From positions 1 to 64,000 of IMG/VR virus record IMGVR_UViG_3300023184_000027: a DNA stretch of 64,000 bases; one strand, 5' to 3'. Within the stretch, counting starts at the first letter, position 1. Each line of letters begins with the position of its first letter. A model generated the notes under the pieces. That model worked only from the letters and a program-made list of their open reading frames with translations. It made no database searches and was not told the origin of the DNA. Positions 727 to 26,430 of the stretch are shown here, in pieces. Made by a program: the position numbers and the translations under genes.

Positions 727-1038
727 TTAAAATAAATTGAGGGATGTAATTCGTTTATCCGTAATTTTTTCAACAACTTCAGTCATCAAAGATTTTAATC
801 TTTTATAATCAATACCTAATTGATTTGTGATATCACTAATGGTTTTAATACTAAACGCCATATCATCACCTATTTCATCATAAATAATGATAATATCACC
901 ATTTCTTAACGAAACCCATTGTTCTTCTTCACCATAGGTATCGTTTCGTCTCATTTTAGATACCACTTTTTTCTCTAATGGACCAATAAATTTGATGATA
1001 ACATCAATTAATTTATTTTCAGTAATCAATACTTTCAT
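727..1038 (-). CDS. Hypothetical protein with MKxxITE leader
   Basis: N-terminus MKVLITENKL; GTATTTAAT upstream. Confidence 0.7.
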   Translation of the reverse strand: MKVLITENKLIDVIIKFIGPLEKKVVSKMRRNDTYGEEEQWVSLRNGDIIIIYDEIGDDMAFSIKTISDITNQLGIDYKRLKSLMTEVVEKITDKRITSLNLF

Positions 1039-1134
1039 ACTATTAAATACTATTATTTTCCATTATAATGTAATATAACCCAATATTAAGACATTTTTTT
1101 CCACTAAAAGTGGTATTTTGGCAAATATTTTCCA

Positions 1135-1527
1135 CTATTCTATTGTTTTAACAGGAATATTAAAGTTATCCCAAAACCAATCAATAAATGGTTTGTGCCA
1201 TCTATGACCAAATAAACCATTTAATTGGTCTAGTTTATCAGTGTCTTCAAACTCTAATATTGGAGATTTTTCAATCATTTCTTTTAAAAAAACAGGACTT
1301 AAAGTTTCGGTTTCTTCACTACGCCAATAATCCTCACCATACCATCTGAATAGAGTGTTATCGCCACCATCTTCATAATCATCTGTATAGAATTCTATTG
1401 CATAATCAACTTCATTACCCCAATCATCTATGCCTGGTGTCCATCCAATATTATCAACATCAAACATACTATTAATATATTTGAGTATTAAATCATACAC
1501 TTTATCTTCAGTTATTATAATTTTCAT
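1135..1527 (-). CDS. Hypothetical protein, ITE leader + WF..N..PVK C-terminal family
   Basis: MKIIITEDKV; C-terminal WFWDNFNIPVKTIE. Confidence 0.75.
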   Translation of the reverse strand: MKIIITEDKVYDLILKYINSMFDVDNIGWTPGIDDWGNEVDYAIEFYTDDYEDGGDNTLFRWYGEDYWRSEETETLSPVFLKEMIEKSPILEFEDTDKLDQLNGLFGHRWHKPFIDWFWDNFNIPVKTIE

Positions 1528-1538
1528 ATTTATAAATA

Positions 1539-2384
1539 TTAAATTAAATCGGATAAGGGTAAAATATCAATAGAATTATCACCATAATTGGTAACAATAA
1601 CATTAGTATCATTTGACGCTATCCCATGAGGAAAACTAAATCCGGGGATTGTTTTAATAAAACTTAACTTATCGTCGATTAGTTTAAAATGTAATAATGA
1701 ATCTTGAGCTTGTAAGGTTATAAAACCATCCTCACCACTCAAACAAACCGCGTCAGTCTGACCATAAAAAGTTAATTCATCTATTTGTTTTAAACTAGGA
1801 TATTCAAATAAATATAAAATAGAATCGGTCACAGTAACTTTATTTGTCGCCGATGGTCGGCTACTTGAAGATGAGATTAATATTCTATCGTTGATGATTA
1901 AAATATCTTTAGGGTAATGCTTGAAATTATTAAATTGACGAACATAACCACTGTTAATATTCACATAGAAACATCCCCTATATGTATTATTACTTGTATT
2001 AGTAACAATCACATTATCATTATCAATGATTCTACACCCGTGTATTTGGTCTATTTGTTTTTTAACAATATCTTTAACAAAAACAATTTTATTATCAATT
2101 AAATTAAAAATAGAAATAACACCATATCCATTACCGGTTGATATTATTAACCCATCTTTATAATCAATTAAATCAGGACAATAATTTGTGGTAATTTCAT
2201 CTATGATGGTAAAATCGCCATTCTCAATGGTAATTAAATATATTTTTTTATTTAAAAATGATGCCACCAAAATTAAATTATCAGTCACAAATGAAACCGA
2301 TGTTGCCGTCGCATGTCTTTTATTTTGTCCAGCAAAAACTGTTGGGTATTTTTCTAAATTAAAATCCGGTAATTTAAATTTCAT
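1539..2384 (-). CDS. Beta-propeller-like protein (YncE/NHL-like)
   Basis: Repeated beta blades, PHGI/IHG motifs, VTNYGDNSI. Confidence 0.55.
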   Translation of the reverse strand: MKFKLPDFNLEKYPTVFAGQNKRHATATSVSFVTDNLILVASFLNKKIYLITIENGDFTIIDEITTNYCPDLIDYKDGLIISTGNGYGVISIFNLIDNKIVFVKDIVKKQIDQIHGCRIIDNDNVIVTNTSNNTYRGCFYVNINSGYVRQFNNFKHYPKDILIINDRILISSSSSRPSATNKVTVTDSILYLFEYPSLKQIDELTFYGQTDAVCLSGEDGFITLQAQDSLLHFKLIDDKLSFIKTIPGFSFPHGIASNDTNVIVTNYGDNSIDILPLSDLI

Positions 2385-2385
2385 A

Positions 2386-3093
2386 TTAATTAATTTTATA
2401 GTATTCTTTTATTTCTTTAATGGGGTTTGTCCATTTCCTTAAATATTTTTTTTTAGCAAATGCTTTCACATATACCGACCTTAATTTAGATGATAGATTT
2501 GTCTCTTTATCCACAGTTAGATTAACAGTGTGGATTCTTCTGTGAAATTGAGGTTCTTTAATTAACACAGATTTAATTTTATTATGTTTTAATCTATAGG
2601 AAAATTCAACATCTGCATGACATATCCAATTTTCAAAACCGATTAAATTATTAAATAATGTTTTCTTAATCCCTAAGATTGCAAAAGCGGTTTCCTCACC
2701 CTTAATTGTTTTAATATCATCAACTATTTTAAAATTTAAAAATTTAAAATTAACAACATCAAATGATTCAATATTCTCATAAAAATTATTTAACATCCCA
2801 TCAATCATTAAATCATCAGAGTCAAAAAATAAAACATACTCAAACATTGATTCATTAATTAAATTATTTTTAATAATGTAAGGACCAACATTCTCATTGA
2901 AATGGAAAACTTTTATGTCCCGATAAAACTCCTCGTTTTCTTGTATATGTTTTAATGTTTCTTCACAATTATCTATCCCCACAATTATCTCAACATCAAA
3001 ATTAACATTTTGAGATTGGATGGATTGAATACATTCTTTTAAATATTCAGGGACTTTATGTGTTGGTATTATTATTGAAATTCCGTTAGTCAT
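2386..3093 (-). CDS. Glycosyltransferase family 2
   Basis: ISIIIPTH...ECIQSI..Q, N.GPY..KN, FFDSDD (DxD). Confidence 0.85.
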   Translation of the reverse strand: MTNGISIIIPTHKVPEYLKECIQSIQSQNVNFDVEIIVGIDNCEETLKHIQENEEFYRDIKVFHFNENVGPYIIKNNLINESMFEYVLFFDSDDLMIDGMLNNFYENIESFDVVNFKFLNFKIVDDIKTIKGEETAFAILGIKKTLFNNLIGFENWICHADVEFSYRLKHNKIKSVLIKEPQFHRRIHTVNLTVDKETNLSSKLRSVYVKAFAKKKYLRKWTNPIKEIKEYYKIN

Positions 3094-3116
3094 ACTATTA
3101 AATAATGTTTATATTA

Positions 3117-3142
3117 AAAATCCCCTCTAATTGAGGGGATTA
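3117..3142. terminator. Intrinsic terminator
   Basis: AATCCCCTC-TAATT-GAGGGGATT hairpin. Confidence 0.7.
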
Positions 3143-3144
3143 AA

Positions 3145-3597
3145 TTATATTTCTTCACCAAATAAATCATCTGTCCATCGTTCAGGGACAAGAACCACAA
3201 TATAACCTTTTGTTACATTAACAGCGGATGTTGGTAATAAGTTATTGATTTCTTCTAATAGTTCCTCATTTTCCTTAAAAACGATTCGTAATTTACCATC
3301 TTCAGCGGTATCAACAACTTTATGCTTATTATTTTCCATAATGGACTTGAAGTTTTCAATATCACCAAATTTATCTTCGGTTTCAATATCCAAATCACCA
3401 GTTAAAAATCTTTCAGGGACACTACTTTCACCTCCAGTTTTTAAATATTTAATTTCTTCGTCTGTCATTCCTTCAAGACCAACCTCATTATATAAATCCA
3501 AGATACTATCGTAATAATCGGTATCAAATTGTTCCGTCATAATTAATTTAATAATATCTTTTAATTCAGATTCTGTTAATTTTATAATCTTTGCCAT
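3145..3597 (-). CDS. Acidic hypothetical protein with KLTESEL leader
   Basis: MAKIIKLTESELKDIIKLIMTEQ; ATATTTATA upstream. Confidence 0.7.
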   Translation of the reverse strand: MAKIIKLTESELKDIIKLIMTEQFDTDYYDSILDLYNEVGLEGMTDEEIKYLKTGGESSVPERFLTGDLDIETEDKFGDIENFKSIMENNKHKVVDTAEDGKLRIVFKENEELLEEINNLLPTSAVNVTKGYIVVLVPERWTDDLFGEEI

Positions 3598-3832: not shown

Positions 3833-5056
3833 ATGGAAGAAATAATTAACAAACTAATAAAATATCATATAAAGGGTGTGGATACTTACACTTACAATGA
3901 CTCCACTTGGTTAATCTTTACGAAGACCAAACAATGGGTGATAGAATTAACCGATGGAAAAACTCTATGGTATAATTATAGTTTTTTTAATACCGTATTT
4001 TCTTTTGTATCGTTGGAGGTTGTTCAAAACCAACACCTCATTACAAAATGGGTGGAAGATAATGTGATAAATAAAGTAGAAGACATTTATTTTAGAGATG
4101 CCCGAGATAAAAAACAACAATTTGAAGACACCCTTGAATATGGGGTGAAACGAACCTTAAACGCTGTTGGAGACCCTAAACTTTTAATTGAAGACACTAT
4201 TGAAAATGGGGTGAAAAACATTAGAAATGTAAGGGTTAAACGGTTAGATTCTGTTGAAGACACAATTCAAAATGGGGTTAAGACTACCTACGCTTATCCT
4301 GACACATCCAAAGTTGGTGTTAATGACACCATACAAAATGGTGTGAAGAGTACCAAACCTTATGATTATGAACAAATCCCCGATGTTAATTATGTTATTG
4401 AAAATGGTGTTAAAGAAACACAATTTAACACTTACGAAAATAAAAGTTGGATTGAAGGCATTATTAAAGAAGGTGTAAAACAAACCTTACCTGAAGTGGG
4501 AAAATATATTAACGATGTTGAAGAGGTAATTCAAGAGGGGATAAATCATACTCAACCTCATCTTATAAAAAATAGATATATCGTTGAAGAGGTAATTGAA
4601 GATGGTGTTAAAAGTTCTCACCCACTCCAATATATCTCAAAAGAGATAATTGATGGGGTGGTTAATGATGGTATAATAGAAACCCACGATGATACATACC
4701 ACCACAAAGGAAGAATAGATGGCGTAATTAAGAATGGAGTTAAAGAAACTAAAACAACCGGTAATGATGACCTTACAGCAACTTTTCAATGGATGGATGA
4801 AAATAAAACCGATGATGTTCCCAAAATGATTGATGATATAATTGAGAATGGTATTAAAAAAACAAAACCCGCTAATGGTGACCTTGTATCCGCTATTGAA
4901 TGGATGGATGAAAATAAAACTTTGAATGTCCCCAAAATGATTGATGATATAATTGAGAATGGGGAAAAGATAAATGGAACTTATGCTGGTGGTCAACGTC
5001 AAAGTGAAAAATGTAAATCCGTTGTTGAATATGGAATAAAAAACCCCACCGATTAG
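3833..5056 (+). CDS. Tandem-repeat protein (about 22-aa I.NGVK repeats)
   Basis: About 13 repeats ending IENGVK/IQNGVK; near-exact DNA duplication 4789-4850 vs 4900-4961. Confidence 0.75.
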   Translation: MEEIINKLIKYHIKGVDTYTYNDSTWLIFTKTKQWVIELTDGKTLWYNYSFFNTVFSFVSLEVVQNQHLITKWVEDNVINKVEDIYFRDARDKKQQFEDTLEYGVKRTLNAVGDPKLLIEDTIENGVKNIRNVRVKRLDSVEDTIQNGVKTTYAYPDTSKVGVNDTIQNGVKSTKPYDYEQIPDVNYVIENGVKETQFNTYENKSWIEGIIKEGVKQTLPEVGKYINDVEEVIQEGINHTQPHLIKNRYIVEEVIEDGVKSSHPLQYISKEIIDGVVNDGIIETHDDTYHHKGRIDGVIKNGVKETKTTGNDDLTATFQWMDENKTDDVPKMIDDIIENGIKKTKPANGDLVSAIEWMDENKTLNVPKMIDDIIENGEKINGTYAGGQRQSEKCKSVVEYGIKNPTD

Positions 5057-5197: not shown

Positions 5198-5419
5198 TTA
5201 AATAAGTGTGGCGGCAATATTATCGTCCCACATCCCAAACCCTTCAGCTGAGTTTTCATTAATATAATCCAACACTTCGTGATAACTTTTTCCTTCTAAT
5301 TGAGGAAACTCACTTAAATAAAATGAGATATTAGATGTTAAAGTGATAAGAGACAAACCATCCTCTTCCATTCTTTCAAATTGATTGGGTGTTTGTACAA
5401 TAGTTAATTCTTCTTCCAT
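5198..5419 (-). CDS. Small acidic protein (FPQLEG family)
   Basis: SEFPQLEGKSYHEVLDYINEN resembles 345-686 and 7114-7407. Confidence 0.6.
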   Translation of the reverse strand: MEEELTIVQTPNQFERMEEDGLSLITLTSNISFYLSEFPQLEGKSYHEVLDYINENSAEGFGMWDDNIAATLI

Positions 5420-5479: not shown

Positions 5480-5851
5480 TTACCAAGTTCTACACGCCCA
5501 ATATCTCGCTTTCCATCTTGGACCAGGAGTATCACAATTCATTCTTGCTCTAAAAGATTTTCTTCTTGCTGGATTATTCTTTTTGATTACCATTCTTTTA
5601 CCTTTGGCGGATTTTCCTCCAAATCCAAAATTTACCTTAACAACATTTCCTTTGTCGTTCTTAACATACACTTTAAACTTTTTTATATCGCCTTGCATAA
5701 TTTTACCAAGTTGGACTTTTCGTCCCTGATATTCAGCTTCCGTTAGTAAATCACCAACAACAAAGTTGGTTTCCTCAACGGAGCCATAAAAACTATCGTC
5801 TATATTGTTAAATAGTTTTTCGTACTGTGATTCTGTAATTATTAATTTCAT
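5480..5851 (-). CDS. Basic phage protein with ITE leader
   Basis: MKLIITESQY...LLTE then EAEYQGRKV...KVNFG...RKSFRARMNC...ARYWAC, a motif set I recognise from large-phage hypothetical proteins. Confidence 0.75.
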   Translation of the reverse strand: MKLIITESQYEKLFNNIDDSFYGSVEETNFVVGDLLTEAEYQGRKVQLGKIMQGDIKKFKVYVKNDKGNVVKVNFGFGGKSAKGKRMVIKKNNPARRKSFRARMNCDTPGPRWKARYWACRTW

Positions 5852-5946
5852 TTCTTTTCGTAATGAGTCATCGTTGGTTTATTCTCACCTTCGGCTAAAT
5901 AACCCTCCAATATCGTTTCTTGTCTTTCAGTAATTATAAGTTTCAT
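5848..5946 (-). CDS. Leader-only mini-ORF (32 aa, not in ORF track)
   Basis: MKLIITERQETILEGYLAEGENKPTMTHYEKK; stop overlaps next start (ATGA); ATATTTAT upstream. Confidence 0.55.
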   Translation of the reverse strand: MKLIITERQETILEGYLAEGENKPTMTHYEKK

Positions 5947-5966: not shown

Positions 5967-6218
5967 TCAAAAAGAGAAGGGGATTACATATAATTTATAT
6001 TTCTCGGAGAACCATTTTCCCACCACTTTATGATAATTTCCTGACCCAAACCAATTTACTAAATCTAAATGAACCTTACCTACTACACCAATTTGATTAA
6101 GACTTTTATGATATATCAAAACACCATTAATACCAATAGATTTTTCACTTTCATACACTTCTCTATTACCATAGGTAAGTTCCAAATATTTTAGTATAAC
6201 TTTTTCTTTCTTATCCAT
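5967..6218 (-). CDS. Small protein of WF.EKY.L family
   Basis: C-terminal WFSEKYKLYV. Confidence 0.7.
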   Translation of the reverse strand: MDKKEKVILKYLELTYGNREVYESEKSIGINGVLIYHKSLNQIGVVGKVHLDLVNWFGSGNYHKVVGKWFSEKYKLYVIPFSF

Positions 6219-6475
6219 TACAAAACCATTAATACCGGTAAATTATACTTCTCTTTAAACCACTCACCCAAATAATCCTGAAATTCTTTTCTTTCAATAC
6301 CAAACATTGCCGAAACCTCGTCAAGTAAATTACCACCATAAAACACAATTTCAGTCTCAGGCGAATATCCAAATCCTTTTTTATTATTGGGTTTTAACCA
6401 ACCAGGGTCGTTAACATCCGGAATTAGTTCCCCATAATAAAACACATCAAAATATTTGAATATTGACTTTTTCAT
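6218..6475 (-). CDS. Small protein of WF.EKY.LPV family
   Basis: C-terminal WFKEKYNLPV; TATCTTTG promoter at 6480-6487 (minus). Confidence 0.7.
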   Translation of the reverse strand: MKKSIFKYFDVFYYGELIPDVNDPGWLKPNNKKGFGYSPETEIVFYGGNLLDEVSAMFGIERKEFQDYLGEWFKEKYNLPVLMVL

Positions 6476-6499
6476 TTGGCAAAGATAATAAAAAAATAT

Positions 6500-6895
6500 T
6501 TACCGACCAAACAATTCAAAAAATTTGTCCTGATTAGTTTTTTCTGGTGGGATAATTAATGATTCAACCTTAAATGTTACAAAGTCCATACCAGTATAGG
6601 TCATCTTAAAATAATCATTTAACATTAATTCATAACTTGTCTTATCACCCAAAACCAAAATATTCTCGTGACAAAATATATTAACACCAACAAGAAATTT
6701 TTTAATAGGTTCAAAATTATGGGGGTCATACATAGTTGTTATCCTAAATCCAGCCGACACAATGTCTCTAATCTCAGGACGAGTCTTTAAGATAACCGAT
6801 TTAAAATTATCAGGTATTTCAATTTCCCTATTTTGTAGAGAGTTCTCGTATAATACCCGAATCTCATCCATACTTAAATTATATTCATTTTCCAT
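6500..6895 (-). CDS. Hypothetical protein
   Basis: ORF co-oriented with neighbours. Confidence 0.6.
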   Translation of the reverse strand: MENEYNLSMDEIRVLYENSLQNREIEIPDNFKSVILKTRPEIRDIVSAGFRITTMYDPHNFEPIKKFLVGVNIFCHENILVLGDKTSYELMLNDYFKMTYTGMDFVTFKVESLIIPPEKTNQDKFFELFGR

Positions 6896-7113
6896 AACCT
6901 ATTTCTTTTTAACAAATTCAATAACTAATCTTATTATAAGTCCGGCAATAATACCAAACAAAGCAAATATAGTTTCTCTCATAACTTTTATTTTTATACA
7001 AGTATAATAAATAAAAAACCCCCAATCAAGGGGGTTAAATTTTATTCTTCTTCTTCGTCGTCATCGGGATTCTAATAATCCAAAACTGAGTTTTTTTGGT
7101 GCTTCTGACATAA

Positions 7114-7407
7114 TTAAAACATTTTAGCTACAGCGTTAATTTCTTGGGTCTCATTCGTAATTTTATCTCTACGAATATCCATATCGTTAAGTTGTTCCTC
7201 AAGTGAATCATAACCAAATTCATCATTGGTTGGTTTCATTTCCGAAGCGTTGGATTCAACATAATCAATAGCTTGTTCTTTAGTCATACCTTCCAATTCA
7301 GGATAATCTTCAAGGTTTAATTCCACCGGTTCTTTTGTAATTGATGTTTCATAATATTCTCTAGCGAATACTGCAATTGTTTTTGGGTTTTCTGTTTGTT
7401 CTGACAT
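7114..7407 (-). CDS. Acidic protein (PVEL..YPELEG family)
   Basis: PVELNLEDYPELEGMTKEQAIDYV. Confidence 0.7.
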   Translation of the reverse strand: MSEQTENPKTIAVFAREYYETSITKEPVELNLEDYPELEGMTKEQAIDYVESNASEMKPTNDEFGYDSLEEQLNDMDIRRDKITNETQEINAVAKMF

Positions 7408-7471
7408 AATGTTTAAGTTTTTTTATAAAGATACAAATAAAAAACCCCACTGTCAAGGTGGGGAGTTAAAT

Positions 7472-7777
7472 TTAATGTTTTATTTGTGTTTGTAAAAAAT
7501 AATTTTCTATTCTTTTCATATCTTCTTCCAATCTTTTAATTCTGGTGGATTGTTCCACATCCATAGGCCAAGCGTTATGTCCGTTAGCACTTTCTTCTAT
7601 CGCCACATTGGTTCTGTCTGATTTATCTTTTAACATTTCATAACTATGTTCCAAGTTAGTTAATCTACCACTAACCTCCGAATACGCCCACACAGCCATA
7701 GAAACAGCTATAACAATTTGAATTAACCACTTAATATTTAAGTTTATTTCCGTTGAATCATTTAATTTATTTTCCAT
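7472..7777 (-). CDS. Membrane-anchored coiled-coil protein
   Basis: N-terminal hydrophobic segment WLIQIVIAVSMAVWAY followed by heptad-like region. Confidence 0.55.
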   Translation of the reverse strand: MENKLNDSTEINLNIKWLIQIVIAVSMAVWAYSEVSGRLTNLEHSYEMLKDKSDRTNVAIEESANGHNAWPMDVEQSTRIKRLEEDMKRIENYFLQTQIKH

Positions 7778-7821
7778 ATATATAAATATTTGAAAAGTAA
7801 ATAGAATTCACTAAATTTAAA

Positions 7822-8100
7822 TTATTCTGAAATATCTTCAATACCGGCATCAGGAAAATTATCTTGAAGGTATCTCAACATTAAATCATTTGAGTTTCCC
7901 CCAAAGAAATCCTCCAACTCATCTTCCATATCATAACTTGCAAATATAAAACTACTTTTATTTTTCCATCCAAAAACATCCCCGTAACTCTTTAAATTTT
8001 GAAACTCCTTATGTTCGGGGTCATAAATTAAATTTGTTCGGTGATTAATATATTTAACGAACGCATCGTACATTCTACTTTCGGTGATTAGTATTTTCAT
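7822..8100 (-). CDS. Hypothetical protein with ITE leader
   Basis: MKILITESRM. Confidence 0.7.
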   Translation of the reverse strand: MKILITESRMYDAFVKYINHRTNLIYDPEHKEFQNLKSYGDVFGWKNKSSFIFASYDMEDELEDFFGGNSNDLMLRYLQDNFPDAGIEDISE

Positions 8101-8101
8101 A

Positions 8102-8425
8102 TTAATAATTTAAATCTGATATATAAAATCGTGAGTTAGTTAATTTGGGTTGGTCAAATTTATCGGCAACATATTCTTTACAAATACTCACCAATTCAGG
8201 GATGGATATACTAAACATATTTTTGACGATACCAAAGTCATCACCATTAAAGTTAATAATTTCAGTTTCTGTATCATAATCAAATGCAACACGACCATCA
8301 CCATTCATATATTCTAATAGAACATGGGGAGCCCTCATACTCATCCTTCGTCTCCCGTGTTTTTCATAACCTTTGAGAACCATATCAAAATATCTAAACA
8401 CAAGTTGTTTTATATTATTCATCAA
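8102..8425 (-). CDS. Hypothetical protein (WF-family-like)
   Basis: VFRYFD...MFSI...YVADKF pattern shared with 6218-6475. Confidence 0.6.
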   Translation of the reverse strand: MMNNIKQLVFRYFDMVLKGYEKHGRRRMSMRAPHVLLEYMNGDGRVAFDYDTETEIINFNGDDFGIVKNMFSISIPELVSICKEYVADKFDQPKLTNSRFYISDLNY

Positions 8426-8775
8426 GCAAAGTTATTTATGATATAATTTAGCCCAATACCCAAATGTTTAATACCAAGAATATTTAAAAAATCGGATTCC
8501 TCTATTTTACGATTTTGTTTTTCACTTAAAACCAATACACCATATTCTTTTTGAGGTTGGGCATAATAATTATTACCATCAATATGAAACAAATACATTG
8601 GACCAAAATTGTTAAGTAACCATCTAAACTCCTCTCTACCATCAGAGAACAAGTATTGACCTTTAGGTCCTAACTCAATCCAATTTGTAATCACTTCAAT
8701 ATGGTCAGACAAATCATATCCCACCTCCTTGGTAATTAAATCTTTTATTTTATTCTCCGTAATTATAAATTTCAT
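8422..8775 (-). CDS. Hypothetical protein with ITE leader
   Basis: MKFIITENKI. Confidence 0.7.
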   Translation of the reverse strand: MKFIITENKIKDLITKEVGYDLSDHIEVITNWIELGPKGQYLFSDGREEFRWLLNNFGPMYLFHIDGNNYYAQPQKEYGVLVLSEKQNRKIEESDFLNILGIKHLGIGLNYIINNFA

Positions 8776-9441: not shown

Positions 9442-10572
9442 TTATTTTATTTTTTTACTAATAGTGAGGATTTTATCTGTTGGTGAATAAACTGGTGGTT
9501 CAGGACTTTCCCAAGATTCACGACCTTGTATTATTTTATAATTACGGTATATCGGACCATTTGATATTAAAATAAAATCTGACTTATATGATAATTTAGG
9601 TGGTTTAACCCTTTTTGAAAATGGAATATAATACTTATCATCTAATTTATATATTCCCTCATTTTTGGCGTTAACCGGTTGGAAAATAATCCGTTTACCC
9701 TCATCTTCAACAACAACTACTTCAGAATAATCTGTTTTTGTTGAGGGACAAAAATTTTGAACAACTTTTGAATTAGGTAAGAATTTTTTAATATGAGGTT
9801 CATAATTACTTTTTGACATAAAAGTTGGTTTATAACTAATATTTTTGAGTAATGTATTTAAAAATTCACCTTTAAATAATTTATCTTTACTATCGTATAC
9901 CCATTGAACAAAATCATTATGTTCAAAAGTTTTCATTTGTTTAATATATGATTTAATAATTAAACTTATTGGGTCATTTTCAAATATAATGTAATTAAGT
10001 TTTGACCAACTAACACCTTTTTCATTAATAGAATTTGGTAGGGAATAAATATTTAAAAACCCTTCAGTTTTATCACAATACTTTGAATTGTAAACTCCGT
10101 AATTATCACTATAAATTTCTTTCAATGATTTTTCAATAATATTACGAAGGTCTTTACATTGATTGTTATCACAATAACCTTTGTTAGACCTATAAGCTTT
10201 AGAGCGTTCAAAAAATAATCGTTCCGTTTCTTTCTCAGATAACTTACCAATATGTCGTTCAAACTTTTCATCAAAATTAATATTATATTTTCTTCTAATA
10301 TCAGACAAATTCATATAAAAATTTGAATTACCTGATTTTTGAACCAAATCAGCATCAAATATATATTCTTTTCCTGTAGTTATATCAGTGAATATAAACA
10401 CTTCAGTTTCCGGTTTTTTTTCAAATCGTCCGGTTGATTTAAATTGTACCATATGAATACCAAATTGAGGTAATAGATGAGGTTCACTAAATCCATTAAA
10501 ATCAATATCCTGTGTTTGTTCCTCAGTTTCCTTTAATATTCTATACTGTTGTTCTGTTATAATAAATTTCAT
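9442..10572 (-). CDS. Large hypothetical protein with ITE leader
   Basis: MKFIITEQQYRILKE; ATATTTATT upstream. Confidence 0.75.
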   Translation of the reverse strand: MKFIITEQQYRILKETEEQTQDIDFNGFSEPHLLPQFGIHMVQFKSTGRFEKKPETEVFIFTDITTGKEYIFDADLVQKSGNSNFYMNLSDIRRKYNINFDEKFERHIGKLSEKETERLFFERSKAYRSNKGYCDNNQCKDLRNIIEKSLKEIYSDNYGVYNSKYCDKTEGFLNIYSLPNSINEKGVSWSKLNYIIFENDPISLIIKSYIKQMKTFEHNDFVQWVYDSKDKLFKGEFLNTLLKNISYKPTFMSKSNYEPHIKKFLPNSKVVQNFCPSTKTDYSEVVVVEDEGKRIIFQPVNAKNEGIYKLDDKYYIPFSKRVKPPKLSYKSDFILISNGPIYRNYKIIQGRESWESPEPPVYSPTDKILTISKKIK

Positions 10573-10590
10573 ATTAATAAATATACCATC

Positions 10591-14212: not shown

Positions 14213-15211
14213 CTAATTGAAGTGGGGGATTGGTTTAACTTTTATATCAACATTATTTTCAGAATCAATAGATACTTCAAAATAAGGAAACTTTTCTTTA
14301 AGATAACCTTCTGGTGTCATTTGATTACCCTTCTTCAAATTATCATCAGCCCATAATGGTTGAAAATTAGTATAATGACATAACCTCTTAACATCTTCAA
14401 GTGTCTTAGCCAACGATATTGGAATAATGTGGTCAATATGCCAACCATATATCCCATAATTATCCCAACTCATTCCTTTTAAAAATCTATTTTCTAAATA
14501 TTTCCTAAACTCATCCGGAGTACAACCAATTATCTTAAACATTGAACTATCCTTTTTAACACCTATCTGTTTTAAATAAGATGATGTCCTTGTACGAAGA
14601 TTACATATTGCACGATAAAAAGGGTCTCTCTGTCTTCTTAATTTGACATGTTTCTTCTTAGATTTTTTATATGTTTCCTGATTATTATCTTTCCATTTCT
14701 TTTTAGTGGTCTTAACCTTTGTCGGATGCTCAAGTCGATAAATCCTCATTCTCTCTTTCTCACATTCCCCACACTTTGTGATTGTACCTTCGTAAAATTC
14801 AGAAATAGGTTTAGTTAACCCACATTTACCACAAGTACTCTCCGTTAAGGTTTCCCTAAGTAATTTTATTTTTTTATTATATATTATTCTTTTTTCCTTA
14901 ACACTGAGTTTAACCTTAACTATATTTTCAAAACTAAATGTCTCCGTAGGATAATACCATATAACATTAGAGTATTTATTCTTCTTAACCTTACCCCGAT
15001 TATTATATTCTATAATCTTATCAGGGTTATTCTCACGATATTTTTTTTTGGATTCCCTAACCTTATCCGGATTATTCTCACGATATATTTTTTTATCAAT
15101 ATTACAACATTCCCGACAACAATAATTTAGACCATCCGATGAACTCTTAAGATTATTAAATTCCGATAATTCCTTATCAATACCACATTTTGAACATTTC
15201 TTTAATCCCAT
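14213..15211 (-). CDS. HNH endonuclease with Zn-finger repeats (probable start MGLKKC)
   Basis: KKCSKC...CREC, CGKC...CGEC, WHIDHIIP...HYTNFQPLW..DNLKK. Confidence 0.8.
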   Translation of the reverse strand: MGLKKCSKCGIDKELSEFNNLKSSSDGLNYCCRECCNIDKKIYRENNPDKVRESKKKYRENNPDKIIEYNNRGKVKKNKYSNVIWYYPTETFSFENIVKVKLSVKEKRIIYNKKIKLLRETLTESTCGKCGLTKPISEFYEGTITKCGECEKERMRIYRLEHPTKVKTTKKKWKDNNQETYKKSKKKHVKLRRQRDPFYRAICNLRTRTSSYLKQIGVKKDSSMFKIIGCTPDEFRKYLENRFLKGMSWDNYGIYGWHIDHIIPISLAKTLEDVKRLCHYTNFQPLWADDNLKKGNQMTPEGYLKEKFPYFEVSIDSENNVDIKVKPIPHFN

Positions 15212-15299
15212 AAAGATAATAATAACAAACTTTTTTTCTTTGTCAAGTTTTTTCACTATCCGGAAATTTTCCGGATTATCAACCATTATTTCCGGATAC

Positions 15300-15605
15300 C
15301 CCAAAATGGGGGGATTTTTTCCCAAAAATTTTTCCAGAATTTTTTAGAAAAATTTTCTATAAAAGTTTTTTTTACCCATACACAATGTAGAGAGGATTAT
15401 CCCCCCTTTTTGGATATAGATATGGGGGGGAGCCAAGGGAGGATACGCCCCCGGTAGGGGGTATGGGGGGTATATAGGGGGGGATGGGAGGGTGTATGGA
15501 CAAAAAACCCCCCTGTAAATAGATAAGGGGGGAGGGGGTATATTTGATTTATCCTAATGAATGGGGGAAAAGTTATCAACATGACATGGTGTCAGTTGTT
15601 AATAA
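15300..15605. other. Non-coding G-run-rich tract with palindromic DnaA-box-like site
   Basis: Many G4-G7 runs on + strand (15424-15538); TTATCAACA-TGACATGGTGTCA-GT-TGTTAATAA at 15573-15605. Confidence 0.6.
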
Positions 15606-20800: not shown

Positions 20801-20832
20801 TTTGGTAGAATAGTTTTTATTTCTTATCTTTG
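20801..20832 (+). promoter_or_regulatory. Bacteroidetes-type promoter
   Basis: TTTG-N20-TATCTTTG upstream of 20854. Confidence 0.7.
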
Positions 20833-21633: not shown

Positions 21634-22034
21634 GACATAAATTAACTTCGACAAATATGGACGATAATTCTTATGCAATTAAAATAATTCCTTTGATGAG
21701 GAAAATCATTAAAAAACATCCGTGGTCCGGAGAATTAGAAGCCGAGAGGTGGTTTAAATATGATTATAAAATTGTTGGTATGACTTTTAACACCGATTAC
21801 TATGAACCAAAATTATTAATTCACATTGAGATTAGTAATTTTAGAATATGCCGATACGACAGGAAAACTGATACTAAAAAATGGGAGAACCCTAAATTTC
21901 GGTATTGGTCATCAATAAAAAGAAATGAATATGTTAGAACTTGGGGTTTAACGGAAATGAAATTATTTGTTAAATTGTTTTCATTCCCACATAGAATTGA
22001 AATTGGGAAAATTAAATTAGTCGATGATGAATAA
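21630..22034 (+). CDS. Hypothetical protein
   Basis: ATGA overlap with previous gene. Confidence 0.65.
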   Translation: MRHKLTSTNMDDNSYAIKIIPLMRKIIKKHPWSGELEAERWFKYDYKIVGMTFNTDYYEPKLLIHIEISNFRICRYDRKTDTKKWENPKFRYWSSIKRNEYVRTWGLTEMKLFVKLFSFPHRIEIGKIKLVDDE

Positions 22035-22347
22035 TAAAATGTCCTCCTTAATTATTAAATACCTCAATCTTACTTACCCCAATAAACTCACATTTAGTCA
22101 ATCCAACTATCATAATAAATCAATTGTGTTTAGGCATGGTGACACTGAAATTGGAATAACGCGGTCGGATATGGACAATTTTATTAGAATTAATAACCGA
22201 ATACATATGGACATATCAAAATGGTTTGGTGATAATTTTGATAAAGGATTTATCAACGAATGTATAATTAAATGGTTATTGATGAAGTATAACTCTAATA
22301 ATGCTGGAGAAATACTTATGTCGGAATGGTTTGGAGTTAACAATTAA
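22024..22347 (+). CDS. Hypothetical protein (WF-family-like)
   Basis: IIKYLNLTY...IHMDISKWFG matches ILKYLELTY...VHLDLVNWFG of 5967-6218. Confidence 0.65.
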   Translation: MMNNKMSSLIIKYLNLTYPNKLTFSQSNYHNKSIVFRHGDTEIGITRSDMDNFIRINNRIHMDISKWFGDNFDKGFINECIIKWLLMKYNSNNAGEILMSEWFGVNN

Positions 22348-22395: not shown

Positions 22396-22686
22396 ATGAA
22401 ACTACTTAAATATTTGATTATCCGGACAACAACAAAGGGTTCTAATGAGGCAATTAGTGTATATAATACATTATACAACACCAATGTGGTTACGACCCCT
22501 ATAAAACCCTTATCCGTTGTTAAACCTAATGTGACCGTTCATAACTCCCCACTGAAACCTACAGATAAGAAACAGGAGATGATAGATTCTTTAGAATACC
22601 TTAAAGGTAAAATTGTGAAGACAAAAAAAGACAAGGAATCAATCTCTATGTTGGAAGCTATCTTGAAGAATATGTTAGATAGATAA
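22396..22686 (+). CDS. Small basic hypothetical protein (probable start MKLLKY)
   Basis: ORF after TATCTTTA promoter-like site. Confidence 0.55.
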   Translation: MKLLKYLIIRTTTKGSNEAISVYNTLYNTNVVTTPIKPLSVVKPNVTVHNSPLKPTDKKQEMIDSLEYLKGKIVKTKKDKESISMLEAILKNMLDR

Positions 22687-23076
22687 ATAATCGTCTGTTA
22701 TTTGTTTAACTTCTAATCCCGTATTTTCTTCAAACCATTGTTTAAATATTGGTTTCCACAAATCCCCAAATAAAGACGTTAGTTTTCTACCAACCACAGG
22801 ATATATGTGTAATAAAGGACAGTCATAGTTGTGTAAACGACCATAACCCGCAAAGTATTCATCTTCCGGACCAGCGTTTGCATTACAACCATAATAAATG
22901 TAAGAATCATCATCATTTATGAAAAAAACAATGTCTCCAAATCTATCAACATCATCTTGGTAAGTGCCAGCTGTCGTCCTCATATTCTCATACCACCCAT
23001 AATCCGGAATAAATTCACTATCCAAATACTTACGAATTATCTTATCAATCTTATTTTCCGTTATTACTATTTTCAT
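22675..23076 (-). CDS. ITE-leader protein of WF family
   Basis: MKIVITENKI...LFGDLWKPIFKQWFEENTGLEVK; paralogue of 1135-1527. Confidence 0.75.
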   Translation of the reverse strand: MKIVITENKIDKIIRKYLDSEFIPDYGWYENMRTTAGTYQDDVDRFGDIVFFINDDDSYIYYGCNANAGPEDEYFAGYGRLHNYDCPLLHIYPVVGRKLTSLFGDLWKPIFKQWFEENTGLEVKQITDDYLSI

Positions 23077-23326
23077 ATAAATAAATATCCCATAAATGAA
23101 AAACCCCCATTAATCTTGGGGGTTATCTTTTTCTTTATTATGTACCACATAAAAATTATGTCCAAAGTGAGGTAAATCAATATTGTCACCAAACCCCAAT
23201 GTCTCAACCATATTTTCAAGGTCTCTATTGGACATCTTATTTAGGACATCCACACCAACCTTTAATAGTATCAGTTCTATAACCTCATCTCTACTAATTT
23301 CTACTGTTGATTTCCACCCCATATTT

Positions 23327-24016: not shown

Positions 24017-24223
24017 AATTATTTACTTTTAGCTTTACCCACAAATTCTATTAATTCATTCGCCAATCGTATCGCCTCATCATAGGACATATACAATCTT
24101 GCGTCAACACTTTTGTCCTGTCTTTCCACCACTCGTAGTACAATTGAATCTTGTCCTTCACTTTCTTGGATAACAGCTTCTTGATACCCACCATCCATTA
24201 TTATTTTTGTTTCTACCCACATA

Positions 24224-24604
24224 TCACTTAATTGAATTAGTTAATTTATCTCTATACTCCTGAGATTCTTTCTCAATATGGTATTTTGTCATCACACTCA
24301 TTGCTTTACGTAACCTTGAAGATTTTTTATTAAACGGATTGTAATACATCCAAAACGGTATTTCCCAAGCAAATTTACCATCAATATAAGCACTAACAAA
24401 ATCTCTATCAGAAAAAGATAGTGTTCCTTCATTTGTTGTTGGATATTTCGGACTATAATAATCCACAAAACAACCATCCATTCCACACATCTCGTTTCTT
24501 TCCCAAAGTTCTTTGTCATTCTCTAATAACCCAATAACACGATTAACATATCTCTCGTTAATCTCCTTCATAGTCAATTTTTCACTCATAATCATAATTA
24601 TCAA
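24224..24604 (-). CDS. Hypothetical protein
   Basis: Co-oriented ORF in operon. Confidence 0.6.
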   Translation of the reverse strand: MIIMIMSEKLTMKEINERYVNRVIGLLENDKELWERNEMCGMDGCFVDYYSPKYPTTNEGTLSFSDRDFVSAYIDGKFAWEIPFWMYYNPFNKKSSRLRKAMSVMTKYHIEKESQEYRDKLTNSIK

Positions 24605-25094
24605 AATATTTATTCATCGGTATTGGTTTTTCATAACCTCCGATTTTTTTTAATTGCTTTTTCATTTCCGATATATCATCTTTAGTGTAATGTGGTGGAA
24701 AAGTTGGTTTCATTCCATATGGCATGTTATGTCTCTCTTCCCAAATTTTCAACCTGTGTTCAGCAGTTGATATCTCGTTAGCTAATTCCGTCCCTGATAC
24801 CCATTTATCATACTCATCTTTAGATTTAATAAGCATTATATCACCACCATAATTGGTGATTTTAGCATCCGGATTGGTTGTATAAACATTTACAATACCA
24901 TCTTGACCATTGTAATCCTCACATAAATCATTCACCGCAAGTTCATTGGTTAATGTGTTTTTCCATTTACTACCATATGACCTAACCTCACAGATATATA
25001 TAAACCCATCTTCACGAGTTTGTAAATAATTACCTATCTTGTTTTGAAGTTCTCTTAATTCTTCTACCGAGTATTTAATAAAATCTATTTCCAT
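24582..25094 (-). CDS. Hypothetical early protein
   Basis: TTTG-N20-TATATTTG promoter at 25099-25130 (minus). Confidence 0.65.
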   Translation of the reverse strand: MEIDFIKYSVEELRELQNKIGNYLQTREDGFIYICEVRSYGSKWKNTLTNELAVNDLCEDYNGQDGIVNVYTTNPDAKITNYGGDIMLIKSKDEYDKWVSGTELANEISTAEHRLKIWEERHNMPYGMKPTFPPHYTKDDISEMKKQLKKIGGYEKPIPMNKYFDNYDYE

Positions 25095-25147
25095 AAGGCA
25101 AATATAGGCATAAAAAAAGGAACTACCAAATAGTTCCCTTATTTTTT

Positions 25148-25483
25148 TTAACTTAAATCTTCTTTATCTTCCATATAATGAACAATTTTAACCGGTAATT
25201 TAAATTTATCTTCAAACCAATGTTTTACTAACAATTTACTTTCATCCATTGTATAACCGAACCAAACTATAGGTAAGAGAATATCATAACAAATTGATAA
25301 AGTATTTAAATTTGGATTGTACACCATTATAATACCACCACCATTTATATAATTAACCAGAAAAACCTCCTTCCCTTGACCATTTCTAATCTGTTTAGTT
25401 TTATTATACATTTTAGAAAATGTTTTATTCAAGTTTTTTATAGCTAATTCGTCTCTACGACTTTCCTTTATTAATAATTTCAT
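25148..25483 (-). CDS. IKE-leader WF-family protein (tandem paralogue)
   Basis: MKLLIKESRRDELA...WFEDKFKLPVK. Confidence 0.75.
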   Translation of the reverse strand: MKLLIKESRRDELAIKNLNKTFSKMYNKTKQIRNGQGKEVFLVNYINGGGIIMVYNPNLNTLSICYDILLPIVWFGYTMDESKLLVKHWFEDKFKLPVKIVHYMEDKEDLS

Positions 25484-25498
25484 ATGTTATTTTATTTT

Positions 25499-25828
25499 TT
25501 AATTTAAAACACCTTTTTGTGTGTGATGAGTAATTTTAACCGGTAATTCAAACTTATCTTCAAACCAATTTTTTACTAACATTTTACTTTCATGTGGTGT
25601 ATAACTGAAATAAACTATGGGAGCAAGAATATCATCACAAATGTATAAAGTTTTCGCCCTTTCACCGTAAATCATTATAACACCATCACCATTTCTATAA
25701 TCAATTCTCCTATGTGACCCTGTTGAATCTGTAATATAATCAACATCAATATACATATTGGAAAATGCTTTATCCAACTCTTTTTTTGCCAATTCGTCTC
25801 TACGACTTTCTTTTATTACTATTCTCAT
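25499..25828 (-). CDS. IKE-leader WF-family protein (tandem paralogue)
   Basis: MRIVIKESRRDELA...WFEDKFELPVK. Confidence 0.75.
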   Translation of the reverse strand: MRIVIKESRRDELAKKELDKAFSNMYIDVDYITDSTGSHRRIDYRNGDGVIMIYGERAKTLYICDDILAPIVYFSYTPHESKMLVKNWFEDKFELPVKITHHTQKGVLN

Positions 25829-26430
25829 ACGTCATTTGATTTTATGTTATAAACACTTCTGTATCTACTCTTTAAATCATAATCACTTAAATCTTCCAAT
25901 TCACTAATCCTGTACAATGAATTTTTATGAAGATAATTAATCATTTCTCCTCTACTTATATTATCAGTATTAACCATCTGATAACATTTACGCCAATCAT
26001 CCGATTCGTGAGTTTCATCAATCTCTATTTCCGGATGACCAATTTCTTGTCCAAACTTGGTTGTATATTTTTCATCATACCATTCAGTTATCACATTAAA
26101 TATAAAAGATTTTCTAACCTGTAACATTGTTGATAAATAATCAATCTCATCTGTATCAACAAATAAATCACCAGCATAAAACTTTTCATCTCCATCATCC
26201 TCATCCTCATCACCCATAAAATTATACCTCGCCTCAATAATAATTTTATCCCCTTTACACCATTCCTCATTATAGTTTCCATAATTCTCTTCAGTAGGTG
26301 GAGTGACTCTTGTTGTATTAGAGATAATTTTCTCCATATGTTTAATGATAATCGATTTAGCTGCGTCTGTACCTCTAATAAATCGTTTATTAACCTCTTC
26401 TCTTAATATCTTTTTAATTAAATCTTTCAT
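25825..26430 (-). CDS. Hypothetical protein with MKDLIKKILREE leader
   Basis: Leader plus ITEWYDEKY. Confidence 0.7.
   Translation of the reverse strand: MKDLIKKILREEVNKRFIRGTDAAKSIIIKHMEKIISNTTRVTPPTEENYGNYNEEWCKGDKIIIEARYNFMGDEDEDDGDEKFYAGDLFVDTDEIDYLSTMLQVRKSFIFNVITEWYDEKYTTKFGQEIGHPEIEIDETHESDDWRKCYQMVNTDNISRGEMINYLHKNSLYRISELEDLSDYDLKSRYRSVYNIKSNDV

What the first reader, a model, noticed from the sequence alone, without database searches (positions are those of the whole stretch)
727..26430. Expanded, diversified family of small W-F-x-(E/D)-K-x-x-L-P-V proteins
Seen: a shared pattern (I.KY(L/F) near the N-terminus, FG, then W(F/Y/V)..(K/N)...(L/I)(P/E)V near the C-terminus). It is clear in 1135, 5967, 6218, 22675, 25148 and 25499, and weaker in 727, 3833 (N-domain), 7822, 8102, 22024 and 25825. 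Some members have the ITE leader and late motif; others lack it and follow host-type promoters. 25148/25499 are a tandem duplication. Inference: one small scaffold diversified in an arms race and deployed both early and as virion cargo, showing that the leader is gained and lost modularly.
Basis: partly seen in the sequence, partly recalled or inferred. Interest (0 to 1): 0.6.

Follow-up and report, generated by a model that had tools for sequence, protein, structure and literature searches.

The report
Novel-fold small-protein family in jumbo phage
A marine T4-like jumbo phage carries at least eleven copies of a small, uncharacterised, virus-only protein whose predicted fold matches no solved structure, and most copies begin with a seven-residue tag (MK-x-I-I-T-E) that also heads unrelated proteins and may direct them into the virus head, though that is untested.

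Summary
The family is real. Nine window genes are homologous by leader-stripped profiles (E <= 6e-9): 1135, 5967, 6218, 7822, 8102, 22024, 22675, 25148 and 25499. Two more lie at 151 kb of the same 208-kb virus record. The other three claimed members are not established. 727 shares only the leader and first helix. The 3833 N-domain and 25825 show weak C-terminal resemblance only.

AlphaFold models of a leader-bearing long member and a leaderless short member have pLDDT about 94. They share one topology and hit the same uncharacterised phage proteins. Neither Foldseek nor VIA-align finds a PDB match.

The family is large (596 clusters at 50% identity), virus-only, and has no Pfam or PHROG match.

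The 'ITE leader' is the majority state in the family (82% of representatives). It occurs only at the N-terminus, is unstructured in the model, and is missing from inner domains of fusions. It also sits on unrelated bodies, including a PF25735 domain. A complete relative encodes T4-type portal, gp21 protease and gp23, so a T4-like capsid-targeting propeptide cut after Glu7 is plausible but untested.

An arms race is not supported: orthologue dN/dS is 0.20-0.28, like the neighbours. Copy number does vary among relatives. The promoter-leader correlation is suggestive only (p about 0.08).

The parts
1135..1527 (-). Family member, long acidic form (130 aa, pI 4.1) with the MKIIITE leader and the strict C-terminal motif.
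   Evidence: body-only E 8e-25. AF2 model pLDDT 94, pTM 0.85.
5967..6218 (-). Family member, short leaderless form (83 aa). Its start overlaps the stop of 6218.
   Evidence: body-only E 2e-11; hhalign 96.7%.
6218..6475 (-). Family member, short leaderless form (85 aa) with the strict C-terminal motif.
   Evidence: E 3e-15. AF2 model pLDDT 94.7. BFVD hits shared with the 1135 model.
7822..8100 (-). Family member with the MKILITE leader (92 aa). The C-terminal motif is degenerate (Y-L-Q-D-N-F-P-D-A-G-I).
   Evidence: body-only E 6e-9; hhalign 98.1%, 83 columns.
8102..8425 (-). Family member, leaderless (107 aa from TTG at 8425, or ATG one codon later). Closest paralogue of 6218.
   Evidence: E 8.5e-6 to 6218; E 9e-10.
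22024..22347 (+). Family member, leaderless (107 aa). Closest paralogue of 5967. The only member on the + strand.
   Evidence: E 7.8e-7 to 5967; E 4e-11.
22675..23076 (-). Family member, long acidic form (133 aa) with the MKIVITE leader. Apparently monocistronic, between a terminator-like hairpin and an ATATTTATT motif.
   Evidence: (E 5e-22). Orthologues 84-89% identical in G004 and G005.
25148..25483 (-). Family member (111 aa) with leader variant MKLLIKE. Downstream copy of the tandem pair.
   Evidence: The G004 orthologue is 95.5% identical.
25499..25828 (-). Family member (109 aa) with leader variant MRIVIKE. Upstream copy of the tandem pair. A relative in another sample (P0123) has the canonical MKIVITE.
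   Evidence: 56% identity to 25148; E 1.5e-35.
727..1038 (-). Leader plus first helix only. Membership of the family body is not established.
   Evidence: hhalign aligns residues 1-19 only, also profile against profile. Body-only HMMER E 0.036.
3833..4132 (+). N-domain of the 407-aa repeat protein. Only a weak resemblance to the C-terminal helix module. Not established.
   Evidence: hhalign P 0.02, probability 2.3%, columns 57-98. No HMMER hit at E <= 1.
25825..26430 (-). Highly conserved 201-aa protein. Weak resemblance (E-W-Y-D-E-K-Y helix). Not established as a member.
   Evidence: hhalign probability 5-12%. 412 conserved homologues.
5480..5851 (-). Unrelated basic body (pI 10) carrying the same leader (MKLIITE).
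   Evidence: With the leader removed, hhalign P is 0.79.
8422..8775 (-). Unrelated body carrying the leader (MKFIITE) and first helix.
   Evidence: N-terminal-only E 5.6e-6; residues 1-19 only.
9442..10572 (-). 376-aa protein carrying the leader (MKFIITE).
26432..27040 (-). 202-aa protein carrying the leader (MKIIITE), in the same apparent operon as 25499 and 25148.
38173..38712 (-). 179-aa protein carrying leader variant MKFILTE.
   Evidence: N-terminal-only E 6.8e-6.
42287..42601 (-). 104-aa protein carrying a shifted leader (MKNIILTE).
1531..1539 (-). ATATTTATA motif 12 nt before the start codon of 1135. The same motif precedes 22675 (23080-23088) and 27042 (27423-27431, head of the operon that holds 25499 and 25148).
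6480..6487 (-). TATCTTTG (TAnnTTTG, the Bacteroidota -7-type motif) 12 nt before the start of leaderless 6218. Similar motifs lie at 8427-8434 before 8102 and at 20825-20832 heading the operon with 22024.

Best explanation
SHOWN.
- The window is the first 64 kb of a 208-kb, about 71% complete record of an uncultured marine myovirus.
- A complete 322-kb relative (G004) encodes T4-type portal, gp21-type prohead protease and gp23 capsid protein.
- The record holds at least 11 paralogues, 9 of them in the window, of a small (83-134 aa) virus-only protein family.
- The predicted fold is alpha1, a four-stranded beta-meander, alpha2, alpha3 and a short C-terminal strand. The W-F-x-(D/E)-(K/N)-F-x-L-P-V motif is the end of alpha3 plus the turn into that last strand.
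- The fold has no match among solved structures, and the family is in neither Pfam nor PHROGs.
- Most family members start with M-K-(Y/I)-I-I-T-E.
- This heptapeptide is conserved at the protein level, because its codons vary synonymously.
- It is found only at the extreme N-terminus and is unstructured in the model.
- It is absent from the inner domains of fused relatives, and present on unrelated bodies in the same genome.

INFERRED (this is what the confidence refers to).
- The heptapeptide works like the T4 capsid-targeting sequence (T4: MKTYQEFIAE, cut after I-A-E).
- It takes the protein into the prohead core, where the gp21-type protease cuts after I-T-E.
- The mature small protein is then packaged and delivered with the DNA.
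- Leaderless paralogues (5967, 6218, 8102, 22024) act only inside the infected cell.
- What the domain binds is unknown.
- The family is old and mostly under purifying selection. Gene gain and loss between relatives, rather than fast sequence evolution, is the visible form of diversification.
For: Family and fold:
- motif against shuffles;
- all-vs-all phmmer;
- leader-stripped external profile;
- hhalign with controls;
- AF2 pLDDT 94 and 94.7 with matching element order;
- both models hit the same BFVD set, TMq up to 0.76;
- ESM Atlas clusters at TM 0.78-0.82, Viruses 100%;
- no PDB match: Foldseek best E 0.29, VIA-align best Z 3.4;
- no Pfam or PHROG match;
- 596 clusters at E <= 1e-3.

Leader as an N-terminal signal:
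- 16 N-terminal occurrences against 0.2 expected, and 9:0 for xxITE;
- the DNA pattern occurs 6 times in G000 and 10 times in G004, and 0 times in the reversed control;
- synonymous codon variation;
- residues 1-6 are coil, and the helix starts at residue 7;
- the leaderless model starts directly with that helix;
- inner domains of P0145, P0153, P0160 and P0189 lack it;
- in 150567 the PF25735 domain starts at residue 24, behind the leader.

T4-type machinery in the lineage:
- PF03420 E 6.5e-24, PF07068 E 1e-73, PF07230 E 1e-76 in G004;
- the G004 capsid protein has an I-N-E followed by A about 60 residues in.

T4 precedent:
- the CTS is about 10 residues, is cleaved once, and carries foreign proteins into the head (PMC8442874, PMC9958956);
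- prohead proteases of this kind cut after Glu (PMC5694885).

Context: four leader-bearing members follow the ATATTTATA motif, which also precedes baseplate-wedge and neck genes.
Against: - No proteomic or cleavage data exist; the whole lineage is uncultured.
- The leader to Glu7 is shorter than T4's 10-20-residue propeptides and is not similar to the T4 CTS beyond MK...I-x-E.
- The long forms are strongly acidic (pI 4.1-4.5), unlike T4's basic internal proteins.
- The leader is absent from the nearest GenBank relatives, at least one of which (Flavobacterium phage immuto) has an annotated T4-type prohead protease. It is therefore not a general feature of phages with this protease.
- Neither the protease nor the capsid gene is in the 208-kb record itself, so the link rests on a relative.
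- Leader versus promoter type is not significant.
- Leader-bearing and leaderless genes share apparent operons (7822 with 8102; 5480 with 6218 and 5967).
- The leader and the following helix are conserved as a unit across 82% of a very wide family. This would also fit a structural or oligomerisation role.
Confidence: 0.4

Rival explanations
1. The proteins are never packaged. They are cytoplasmic host-takeover or anti-defence factors. The N-terminal heptapeptide serves a cytoplasmic purpose, such as recognition by a phage or host factor, control of stability, or a docking strand for a partner.
For: - Small, acidic, aromatic-rich proteins in regions of small accessory genes.
- Copy number varies between relatives.
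- No structural-protein similarity.
- Leader-bearing and leaderless genes share operons.
Against: - It does not explain why the tag must be at the extreme N-terminus and is dropped from the inner domains of fusions.
- It does not explain why the tag ends in the I-x-E that suits a gp21-type protease found in the lineage.
Confidence: 0.3
2. The heptapeptide is a beta-strand arm for homo- or hetero-oligomerisation. The family members are small assembly or structural accessory proteins, for example of the tail or neck, that work as dimers of neighbouring gene products.
For: - Eight of the eleven members lie as adjacent pairs: 151405/151001, 25499/25148, 6218/5967 and 8102/7822.
- Fused two-domain versions exist elsewhere.
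- The pair at 151 kb sits in a conserved block just upstream of the tail sheath in all relatives examined.
- K-I-I-I-T is strand-prone sequence.
Against: - Leaderless members keep the whole fold.
- Inner domains of fusions lack the strand.
- The same leader heads unrelated bodies.
- No similarity to any known virion protein.
- Dimerisation was not tested here.
Confidence: 0.2
3. The family is being diversified by an ongoing arms race with host defences, and the leader is repeatedly gained and lost.
For: - Paralogues are only 17-40% identical.
- The tandem pair has dN about equal to dS.
- Members are gained and lost between G000, G004 and G005.
Against: - Orthologue dN/dS is 0.20-0.28, as for the neighbours.
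- Orthologues are 79-97% identical.
- Each subfamily, leader state included, is stable across many metagenomic relatives.
- The leader is the majority state (82%), so losses are few and old.
Confidence: 0.15
4. The shared pattern is a compositional accident of an AT-rich genome.
For: The genome is about 30% G+C, so Lys, Ile, Asn, Phe and Tyr are common.
Against: - 0 motif hits in 300 shuffles.
- Profile E-values down to 1e-25 without the leader.
- Ten control proteins from the same genome score P 0.13-0.45.
- Confident concordant models.
Confidence: 0.01

Closest known systems
Bacteriophage T4 internal proteins IPI, IPII, IPIII and Alt, with their capsid-targeting sequence
   Same: - A short conserved N-terminal peptide that starts MK and ends I-x-E.
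- It is shared by otherwise dissimilar small proteins of a phage with T4-type portal, gp21 protease and gp23.
- In T4 the peptide directs proteins into the prohead core and is cut off after Glu (PMC8442874, PMC9958956, PMC3012670).
   Different: - No sequence similarity to the T4 CTS (MKTYQEFIAE) or to the T4 internal proteins; there is no PHROG or Pfam hit.
- The leader is 7 residues, not about 10.
- Here the main carrier is one large homologous family, not unrelated proteins only.
- The long forms are acidic, whereas T4 internal proteins are described as highly basic.
- Packaging and cleavage are untested.
Ejection-protein paralogues of phiKZ-like giant phages (for example SPN3US gp53/gp54)
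   Same: Paralogous head proteins of a jumbo phage that share an identical N-terminal stretch with a protease motif ending in Glu (PMC5694885).
   Different: - Those propeptides are mostly over 100 residues and the motif is A/S-x-E.
- The proteins are large.
- The lineage is different and there is no detectable homology.
Uncharacterised proteins of 'uncultured Caudovirales phage' in UniProt/BFVD (A0A6J5L9L5, L9M7, L9Q5, L5U3, L6U7, L9N2, L6E9, L5T5 and others), and three virus-only ESM Atlas clusters
   Same: - Same predicted fold: Foldseek probability 1.00 with TMq up to 0.76, and Atlas TM 0.78-0.82.
- Many similar entries have neighbouring accession numbers, which suggests multi-copy expansion in another phage as well.
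   Different: Nothing is known about any of them, and some are multi-domain (176-329 aa).
Pfam PF25735 (Phage_L5_gp82)
   Same: The leader-bearing neighbour 150567-151001 is a member (E 7.7e-29).
   Different: - It is a different domain from the family under study.
- It matters only because it shows the leader as an add-on in front of an independent domain.

Membership tests
The W-F-x-(D/E)-(K/N)-F-x-L-P-V family itself (unnamed) | Significant match to a family profile with the N-terminal leader removed. | tested here: met
   Eleven genome ORFs at E 6e-9 to 8e-25. Ten unrelated control ORFs give hhalign P 0.13-0.45.
The W-F-x-(D/E)-(K/N)-F-x-L-P-V family itself (unnamed) | Shared predicted fold between leader-bearing long and leaderless short members. 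| tested here: met
   The models of 1135 and 6218 have the same order of elements and the same BFVD hits. No direct superposition was possible.
The W-F-x-(D/E)-(K/N)-F-x-L-P-V family itself (unnamed) | Membership of 727, the 3833 N-domain and 25825. | tested here: inconclusive
   727 matches on the leader and helix only. 3833N gives P 0.02. 25825 gives probability 5-12%. Structure jobs were exhausted.
T4-type CTS-bearing internal head proteins | A short N-terminal peptide conserved among otherwise unrelated proteins of one phage. | tested here: met
   16 of 217 ORFs against 0.2 expected; unrelated bodies.
T4-type CTS-bearing internal head proteins | The peptide ends in a (L/I)-x-E site suited to a gp21-type protease. 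| tested here: met
   I-T-E or I-K-E at residues 5-7. That the rule is (L/I)-x-E rests on the T4 CTS ending I-A-E (PMC8442874), on cleavage after Glu (PMC5694885) and on textbook knowledge.
T4-type CTS-bearing internal head proteins | The phage encodes a gp21-family (Peptidase_S77) prohead protease. | tested here: inconclusive
   Present in the complete relative G004 (E 6.5e-24). Absent from the 71%-complete record that holds the window; the head module probably lies in the missing part.
T4-type CTS-bearing internal head proteins | Sequence homology to T4 IPI, IPII, IPIII or Alt. | tested here: not met
   No Pfam or PHROG family at E <= 1 beyond noise.
T4-type CTS-bearing internal head proteins | Cleavage of the peptide and presence of the mature protein in virions. 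| not testable with these tools
   The lineage is uncultured and no proteome exists. The one protease-substrate co-fold gave no verdict.
Any curated family (Pfam-A, PHROGs) or solved structure | A match over threshold. | tested here: not met
   tblastn of three members against 50,697 GenBank phage records found no match at E <= 0.01.

The most novel reading that the evidence does not exclude
A seven-residue N-terminal 'address' (M-K-x-I-I-T-E) marks about 7% of the proteome of a lineage of marine T4-like jumbo phages for encapsidation and delivery into the host. A new-fold family is the main cargo, and leaderless paralogues are the stay-at-home versions. This would be a second, independently evolved capsid-targeting system that can be read directly from sequence. 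It would allow the injected proteome of uncultured phages to be predicted.
Probability: 0.3. Interest if true: 0.75.

Novelty: new variant of a known kind. Interest (0 to 1): 0.55.

Why it matters
Jumbo phages carry many small genes of unknown function, and which of their products travel inside the virion is usually known only from proteomics of cultured phages.

This case offers three things:
- a large, virus-only family with a confident predicted fold that matches no solved structure, making it a clear target for structure determination;
- a short N-terminal tag that behaves like a portable signal in a lineage with T4-type head machinery, which yields a simple, falsifiable prediction (cleavage after Glu7 and presence in virions);
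- natural paired controls, leader-bearing and leaderless paralogues of the same fold in one genome.

If the tag is a capsid-targeting signal, injected proteins could be listed from metagenomic sequence alone. If it is not, the tag still needs an explanation.

Tried and rejected
- **Nucleotide search.** Megablast of window 20-28 kb against GenBank phages found no match.
- **Curated families.** Pfam and PHROG scans of the ten claimed members gave only noise.
- **Related loci.** It was redone with single proteins.
- **Head genes in G000.** PF03420 and PF07068 were absent from the 208-kb record. They were then found in the complete relative.
- **Genome annotation.** PHROG and Pfam scans of about 60 larger proteins left most without a family.
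- **Structure libraries.** Foldseek against the PDB and VIA-align against 48,161 chains gave nothing convincing.
- **Co-fold.** A co-fold of the G004 prohead protease with the G004 orthologue of 22675 gave no verdict (score 0.00, controls not run). It counts neither for nor against binding.
- **Contigs for P0123.** The look-up of encoding contigs returned only sub-kb contigs.
- **Cultured phages.** tblastn of 1135, P0132 and P0245 against GenBank phages found no match.
- **Nearest GenBank relatives.** A profile search of Flavobacterium phage immuto, uncultured phage LR756508 and Microcystis phage Mel-JY01 gave one weak hit (E 1.3e-3). On reading, it lacks the motif.
- **ESM Atlas feature search.** Searches with 727 and 25148 gave only unnamed virus clusters at scores of 0.89-0.91, which are leads only.
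- **Technical failures.** The first hhalign run printed nothing because of a parsing slip and was rerun. An all-vs-all phmmer with --max timed out and was rerun without it.
- **Rejected: leader conservation is a nucleotide-level signal.** The codons vary synonymously.
- **Rejected: a clean rule of leader = late and leaderless = early.** One search does not support it.

Full report
**Where the window lies**

The window is bases 1-64000 of a single 207,952-bp IMG/VR virus record. The record is linear, CheckV completeness is 71%, and G+C is about 30%.
- The record encodes a 1266-aa tail sheath, baseplate-wedge subunits, a neck/adaptor protein, a DNA polymerase, a helicase, a primase, ribonucleotide reductase and a UvsX-like recombinase.
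- Sigma-70-type promoters are not enriched, whereas intrinsic terminators are.
- A complete relative, G004, is 322,477 bp with CheckV 100%. Its orthologue of 22675 is 84% identical.
- G004 encodes a T4-type portal (PF07230, E 1e-76), a gp21-type prohead protease (PF03420, E 6.5e-24) and a gp23 capsid protein (PF07068, E 1e-73) in one module.
- That module is not in the 208-kb record, presumably because it falls in the missing part.
- The nearest GenBank capsid proteins are only 41-46% identical. They belong to Microcystis phage Mel-JY01, Flavobacterium phage immuto and an uncultured 484-kb phage.
- TAnnTTTG motifs sit 9-13 nt before start codons. By my own knowledge this is the Bacteroidota -7 promoter element, so a Bacteroidota host is likely but not shown.

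Yes for the core.
- The strict C-terminal motif occurs 6 times and a looser form 8 times in 217 ORFs. Residue shuffles gave none in 300 trials.
- All-vs-all phmmer joins ten ORFs by single linkage, plus the pair 6218-8102.
- The shared N-terminal leader could create false links. I therefore built a profile from 129 external family sequences and removed the leader columns.
- Eleven ORFs still score E 6e-9 to 8e-25: 1135, 5967, 6218, 7822, 8102, 22024, 22675, 25148, 25499, and genome 151001 and 151405.
- hhalign gives 94-98% probability over about 80 columns for the weakest four. Ten control ORFs of the same genome give P 0.13-0.45.
- Three claimed members fail. 727 aligns only over residues 1-19, even profile to profile. 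The 3833 N-domain (P 0.02) and 25825 (probability 5-12%) show only a faint likeness in the W-x-x-(D/E)-(K/N) helix.
- 25148 and 25499 are adjacent paralogues (56% identity). Both copies are present in G004, and only one is present in G005.

**Fold**
- AlphaFold2 with family alignments gave pLDDT 94.0 and pTM 0.85 for 1135, which has the leader and is 130 aa.
- It gave pLDDT 94.7 and pTM 0.85 for 6218, which has no leader and is 85 aa.
- Both models read helix, four strands, two helices and a two-residue terminal strand. 1135 has an extra helical insert between strands 3 and 4.
- The conserved W-F...L-P-V is the end of the last helix and the turn into the last strand.
- In 1135, residues 1-6 are coil and the helix starts at residue 7. 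In 6218 the helix starts at residue 2.
- Both models hit the same set of uncharacterised 'uncultured Caudovirales phage' proteins in BFVD, at probability 1.00 and TMq up to 0.76.
- The 1135 model matches three virus-only ESM Atlas clusters at TM 0.78-0.82.
- Against solved structures the best Foldseek E is 0.29, and the best VIA-align Z is 3.4 among 48,161 chains. This is unusually low even for orphan models.

**Size and range of the family**
- A word-indexed search found 367 proteins.
- An exhaustive profile search of 1.84 billion cluster representatives found 596 at E <= 1e-3 and 29 at E <= 1e-10.
- All are 'hypothetical protein' from metagenomes, Tara among them, and several lie on contigs of 70-326 kb.
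- Three tblastn queries found nothing in 50,697 GenBank phage records. A profile search of the three nearest GenBank relatives found nothing credible.
- Relatives differ in copy number. G000 has 11 members in 208 kb. G004 has 15-17 profile hits in 322 kb, and G005 has 16-18 in a 115-kb fragment; the lower figure counts hits at E <= 1e-6 and the higher at E <= 1e-3.
- The pair at 151 kb, with a leader-bearing PF25735 protein, a 345-aa protein and the tail sheath, forms a block that is conserved in all relatives examined.

**The leader**
- Of 148 representatives, 122 (82%) begin M-K-(Y/I)-I-I-T-E-(S/N)-(K/R)-L. Within this family the leader is therefore the rule, and its absence is the exception.
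- The four leaderless window members lack exactly the first 7-9 residues and keep the first helix. Their orthologues elsewhere lack them too.
- In the genome, the pattern occurs at the N-terminus of 16 ORFs, against 0.2 expected from its internal frequency. The xxITE form occurs 9 times at N-termini and never internally.
- At the DNA level a degenerate pattern for M-K-x-I-I-T-E occurs 6 times in G000 and 10 times in G004. It never occurs in the reversed control, nor in the three nearest GenBank relatives.
- The codons vary synonymously, so selection acts on the peptide.
- Eight leader-bearing ORFs have bodies that do not match the family once the leader is removed. One of them is a PF25735 domain that starts at residue 24.
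- In genuine two-domain relatives the inner domain has the first helix but not the leader (P0145, P0153, P0160, P0189). Two others keep an internal M-K-Y-I-I-T-E and may be two genes read as one.
- Together this shows a portable signal that works only at the extreme N-terminus.

**Mechanism**
- In T4, a roughly 10-residue N-terminal capsid-targeting sequence (MKTYQEFIAE) takes the internal proteins, or any fused protein, into the prohead core. The gp21 protease then removes it (PMC8442874, PMC9958956, PMC3012670).
- Prohead proteases of T4 and the phiKZ-like giants cut after Glu (PMC5694885).
- The leader here starts M-K and ends I-T-E, and the lineage has a gp21-family protease. The relative's capsid protein has I-N-E followed by Ala at about the position where gp23 is matured in T4 (the T4 position is from my own knowledge).
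- I therefore take a T4-like targeting and cleavage signal as the most likely reading. I hold it at about 0.4.
- Against it: there is no direct evidence; the leader is shorter; the long forms are very acidic; the nearest phage with an annotated T4-type prohead protease (Flavobacterium phage immuto) lacks the tag; and the one co-fold gave no verdict.

**Promoters**
- ATATTTAT(A/T) lies within 60 nt upstream of 31 of 217 genes, against about 2 expected, and in 14 of them at exactly 12-14 nt.
- It precedes a baseplate-wedge gene and the neck gene, but also a nuclease and a DNA methyltransferase.
- TAnnTTTG precedes, among others, the primase.
- By a crude operon walk, leader-bearing genes split 10:4 between the two motifs and other genes split 58:55 (Fisher p 0.26).
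- Within the family the split is 4:2 against 0:4, which by my own arithmetic on that table gives p about 0.08.

**Selection**
- Against G004, orthologue dN/dS is 0.20 for 22024, 0.24 for 22675 and 0.28 for 25499. This is inside the range of 18 neighbouring genes, 0.04-0.71.
- 25148 differs by five nonsynonymous and no synonymous changes, too few to test.
- The tandem pair has dN 0.33 and dS 0.32. This suggests relaxed or diversifying change after duplication, concentrated in the strand region.
- Overall, the paralogues are old and conserved, with turnover in copy number. That is not the signature of a running arms race at the sequence level.

**Limits**
- NG86 estimates on short genes are rough.
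- The operon walk is heuristic.
- The ORF set is a simple longest-ATG call.
- Structure jobs were exhausted before the three doubtful members could be folded.

Noticed in passing
window 5848-5946 (-): A 32-codon ORF that starts M-K-L-I-I-T-E lies between family member 5967 and leader-bearing 5480, and overlaps the start of 5480. It is either a mini-protein or the remnant of a leader-bearing gene.
   Followed up: partly
window 48368-50275 (-): An N6/N4 DNA methyltransferase appears to be interrupted by an intein with a LAGLIDADG endonuclease domain.
   Followed up: no
window 3833-5056 (+): The 407-aa protein has about 14 degenerate repeats ending in N-G-V-K. The last two form a 111-bp tandem repeat at 4725-4962.
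   Followed up: partly
window 345-686 (+), 5198-5419 (-), 7114-7407 (-): A second small paralogue family of acidic proteins is linked by phmmer at E < 0.01.
   Followed up: no
window 58000-64000: G+C rises from about 30% to 45-47% inside a giant ORF, 57749-65128 (-), of 2459 aa. That ORF has two large paralogues elsewhere in the genome.
   Followed up: no
whole genome; examples at window 1531-1539, 7781-7789, 10576-10584, 23080-23088 and 27423-27431 (-): ATATTTAT(A/T) sits exactly 12-14 nt before 14 start codons, and TAnnTTTG sits 9-13 nt before 6. Such spacing implies very short or absent 5' untranslated regions.
   Followed up: partly
window 25825-26430 (-): This is one of the most conserved genes of the lineage, with 412 homologues at 63-91% identity. 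One homologue is annotated with PF28074.
   Followed up: no
proteins P0127, P0138, P0166, P0167, P0265 (other phages): Some family members elsewhere end in a C-x-x-C...H...H tail that looks like a small zinc-binding module.
   Followed up: no
genome 150567-151001 (-) = L004:1568-2002: A PF25735 (Phage_L5_gp82) protein with the leader lies in a conserved block: two family members, this gene, a 345-aa gene and the tail sheath.
   Followed up: partly
window 14213-15325 (-): A 370-aa protein combines endonuclease VII and HNH/Lar-like matches. It has a paralogue at genome 125670-126329.
   Followed up: no
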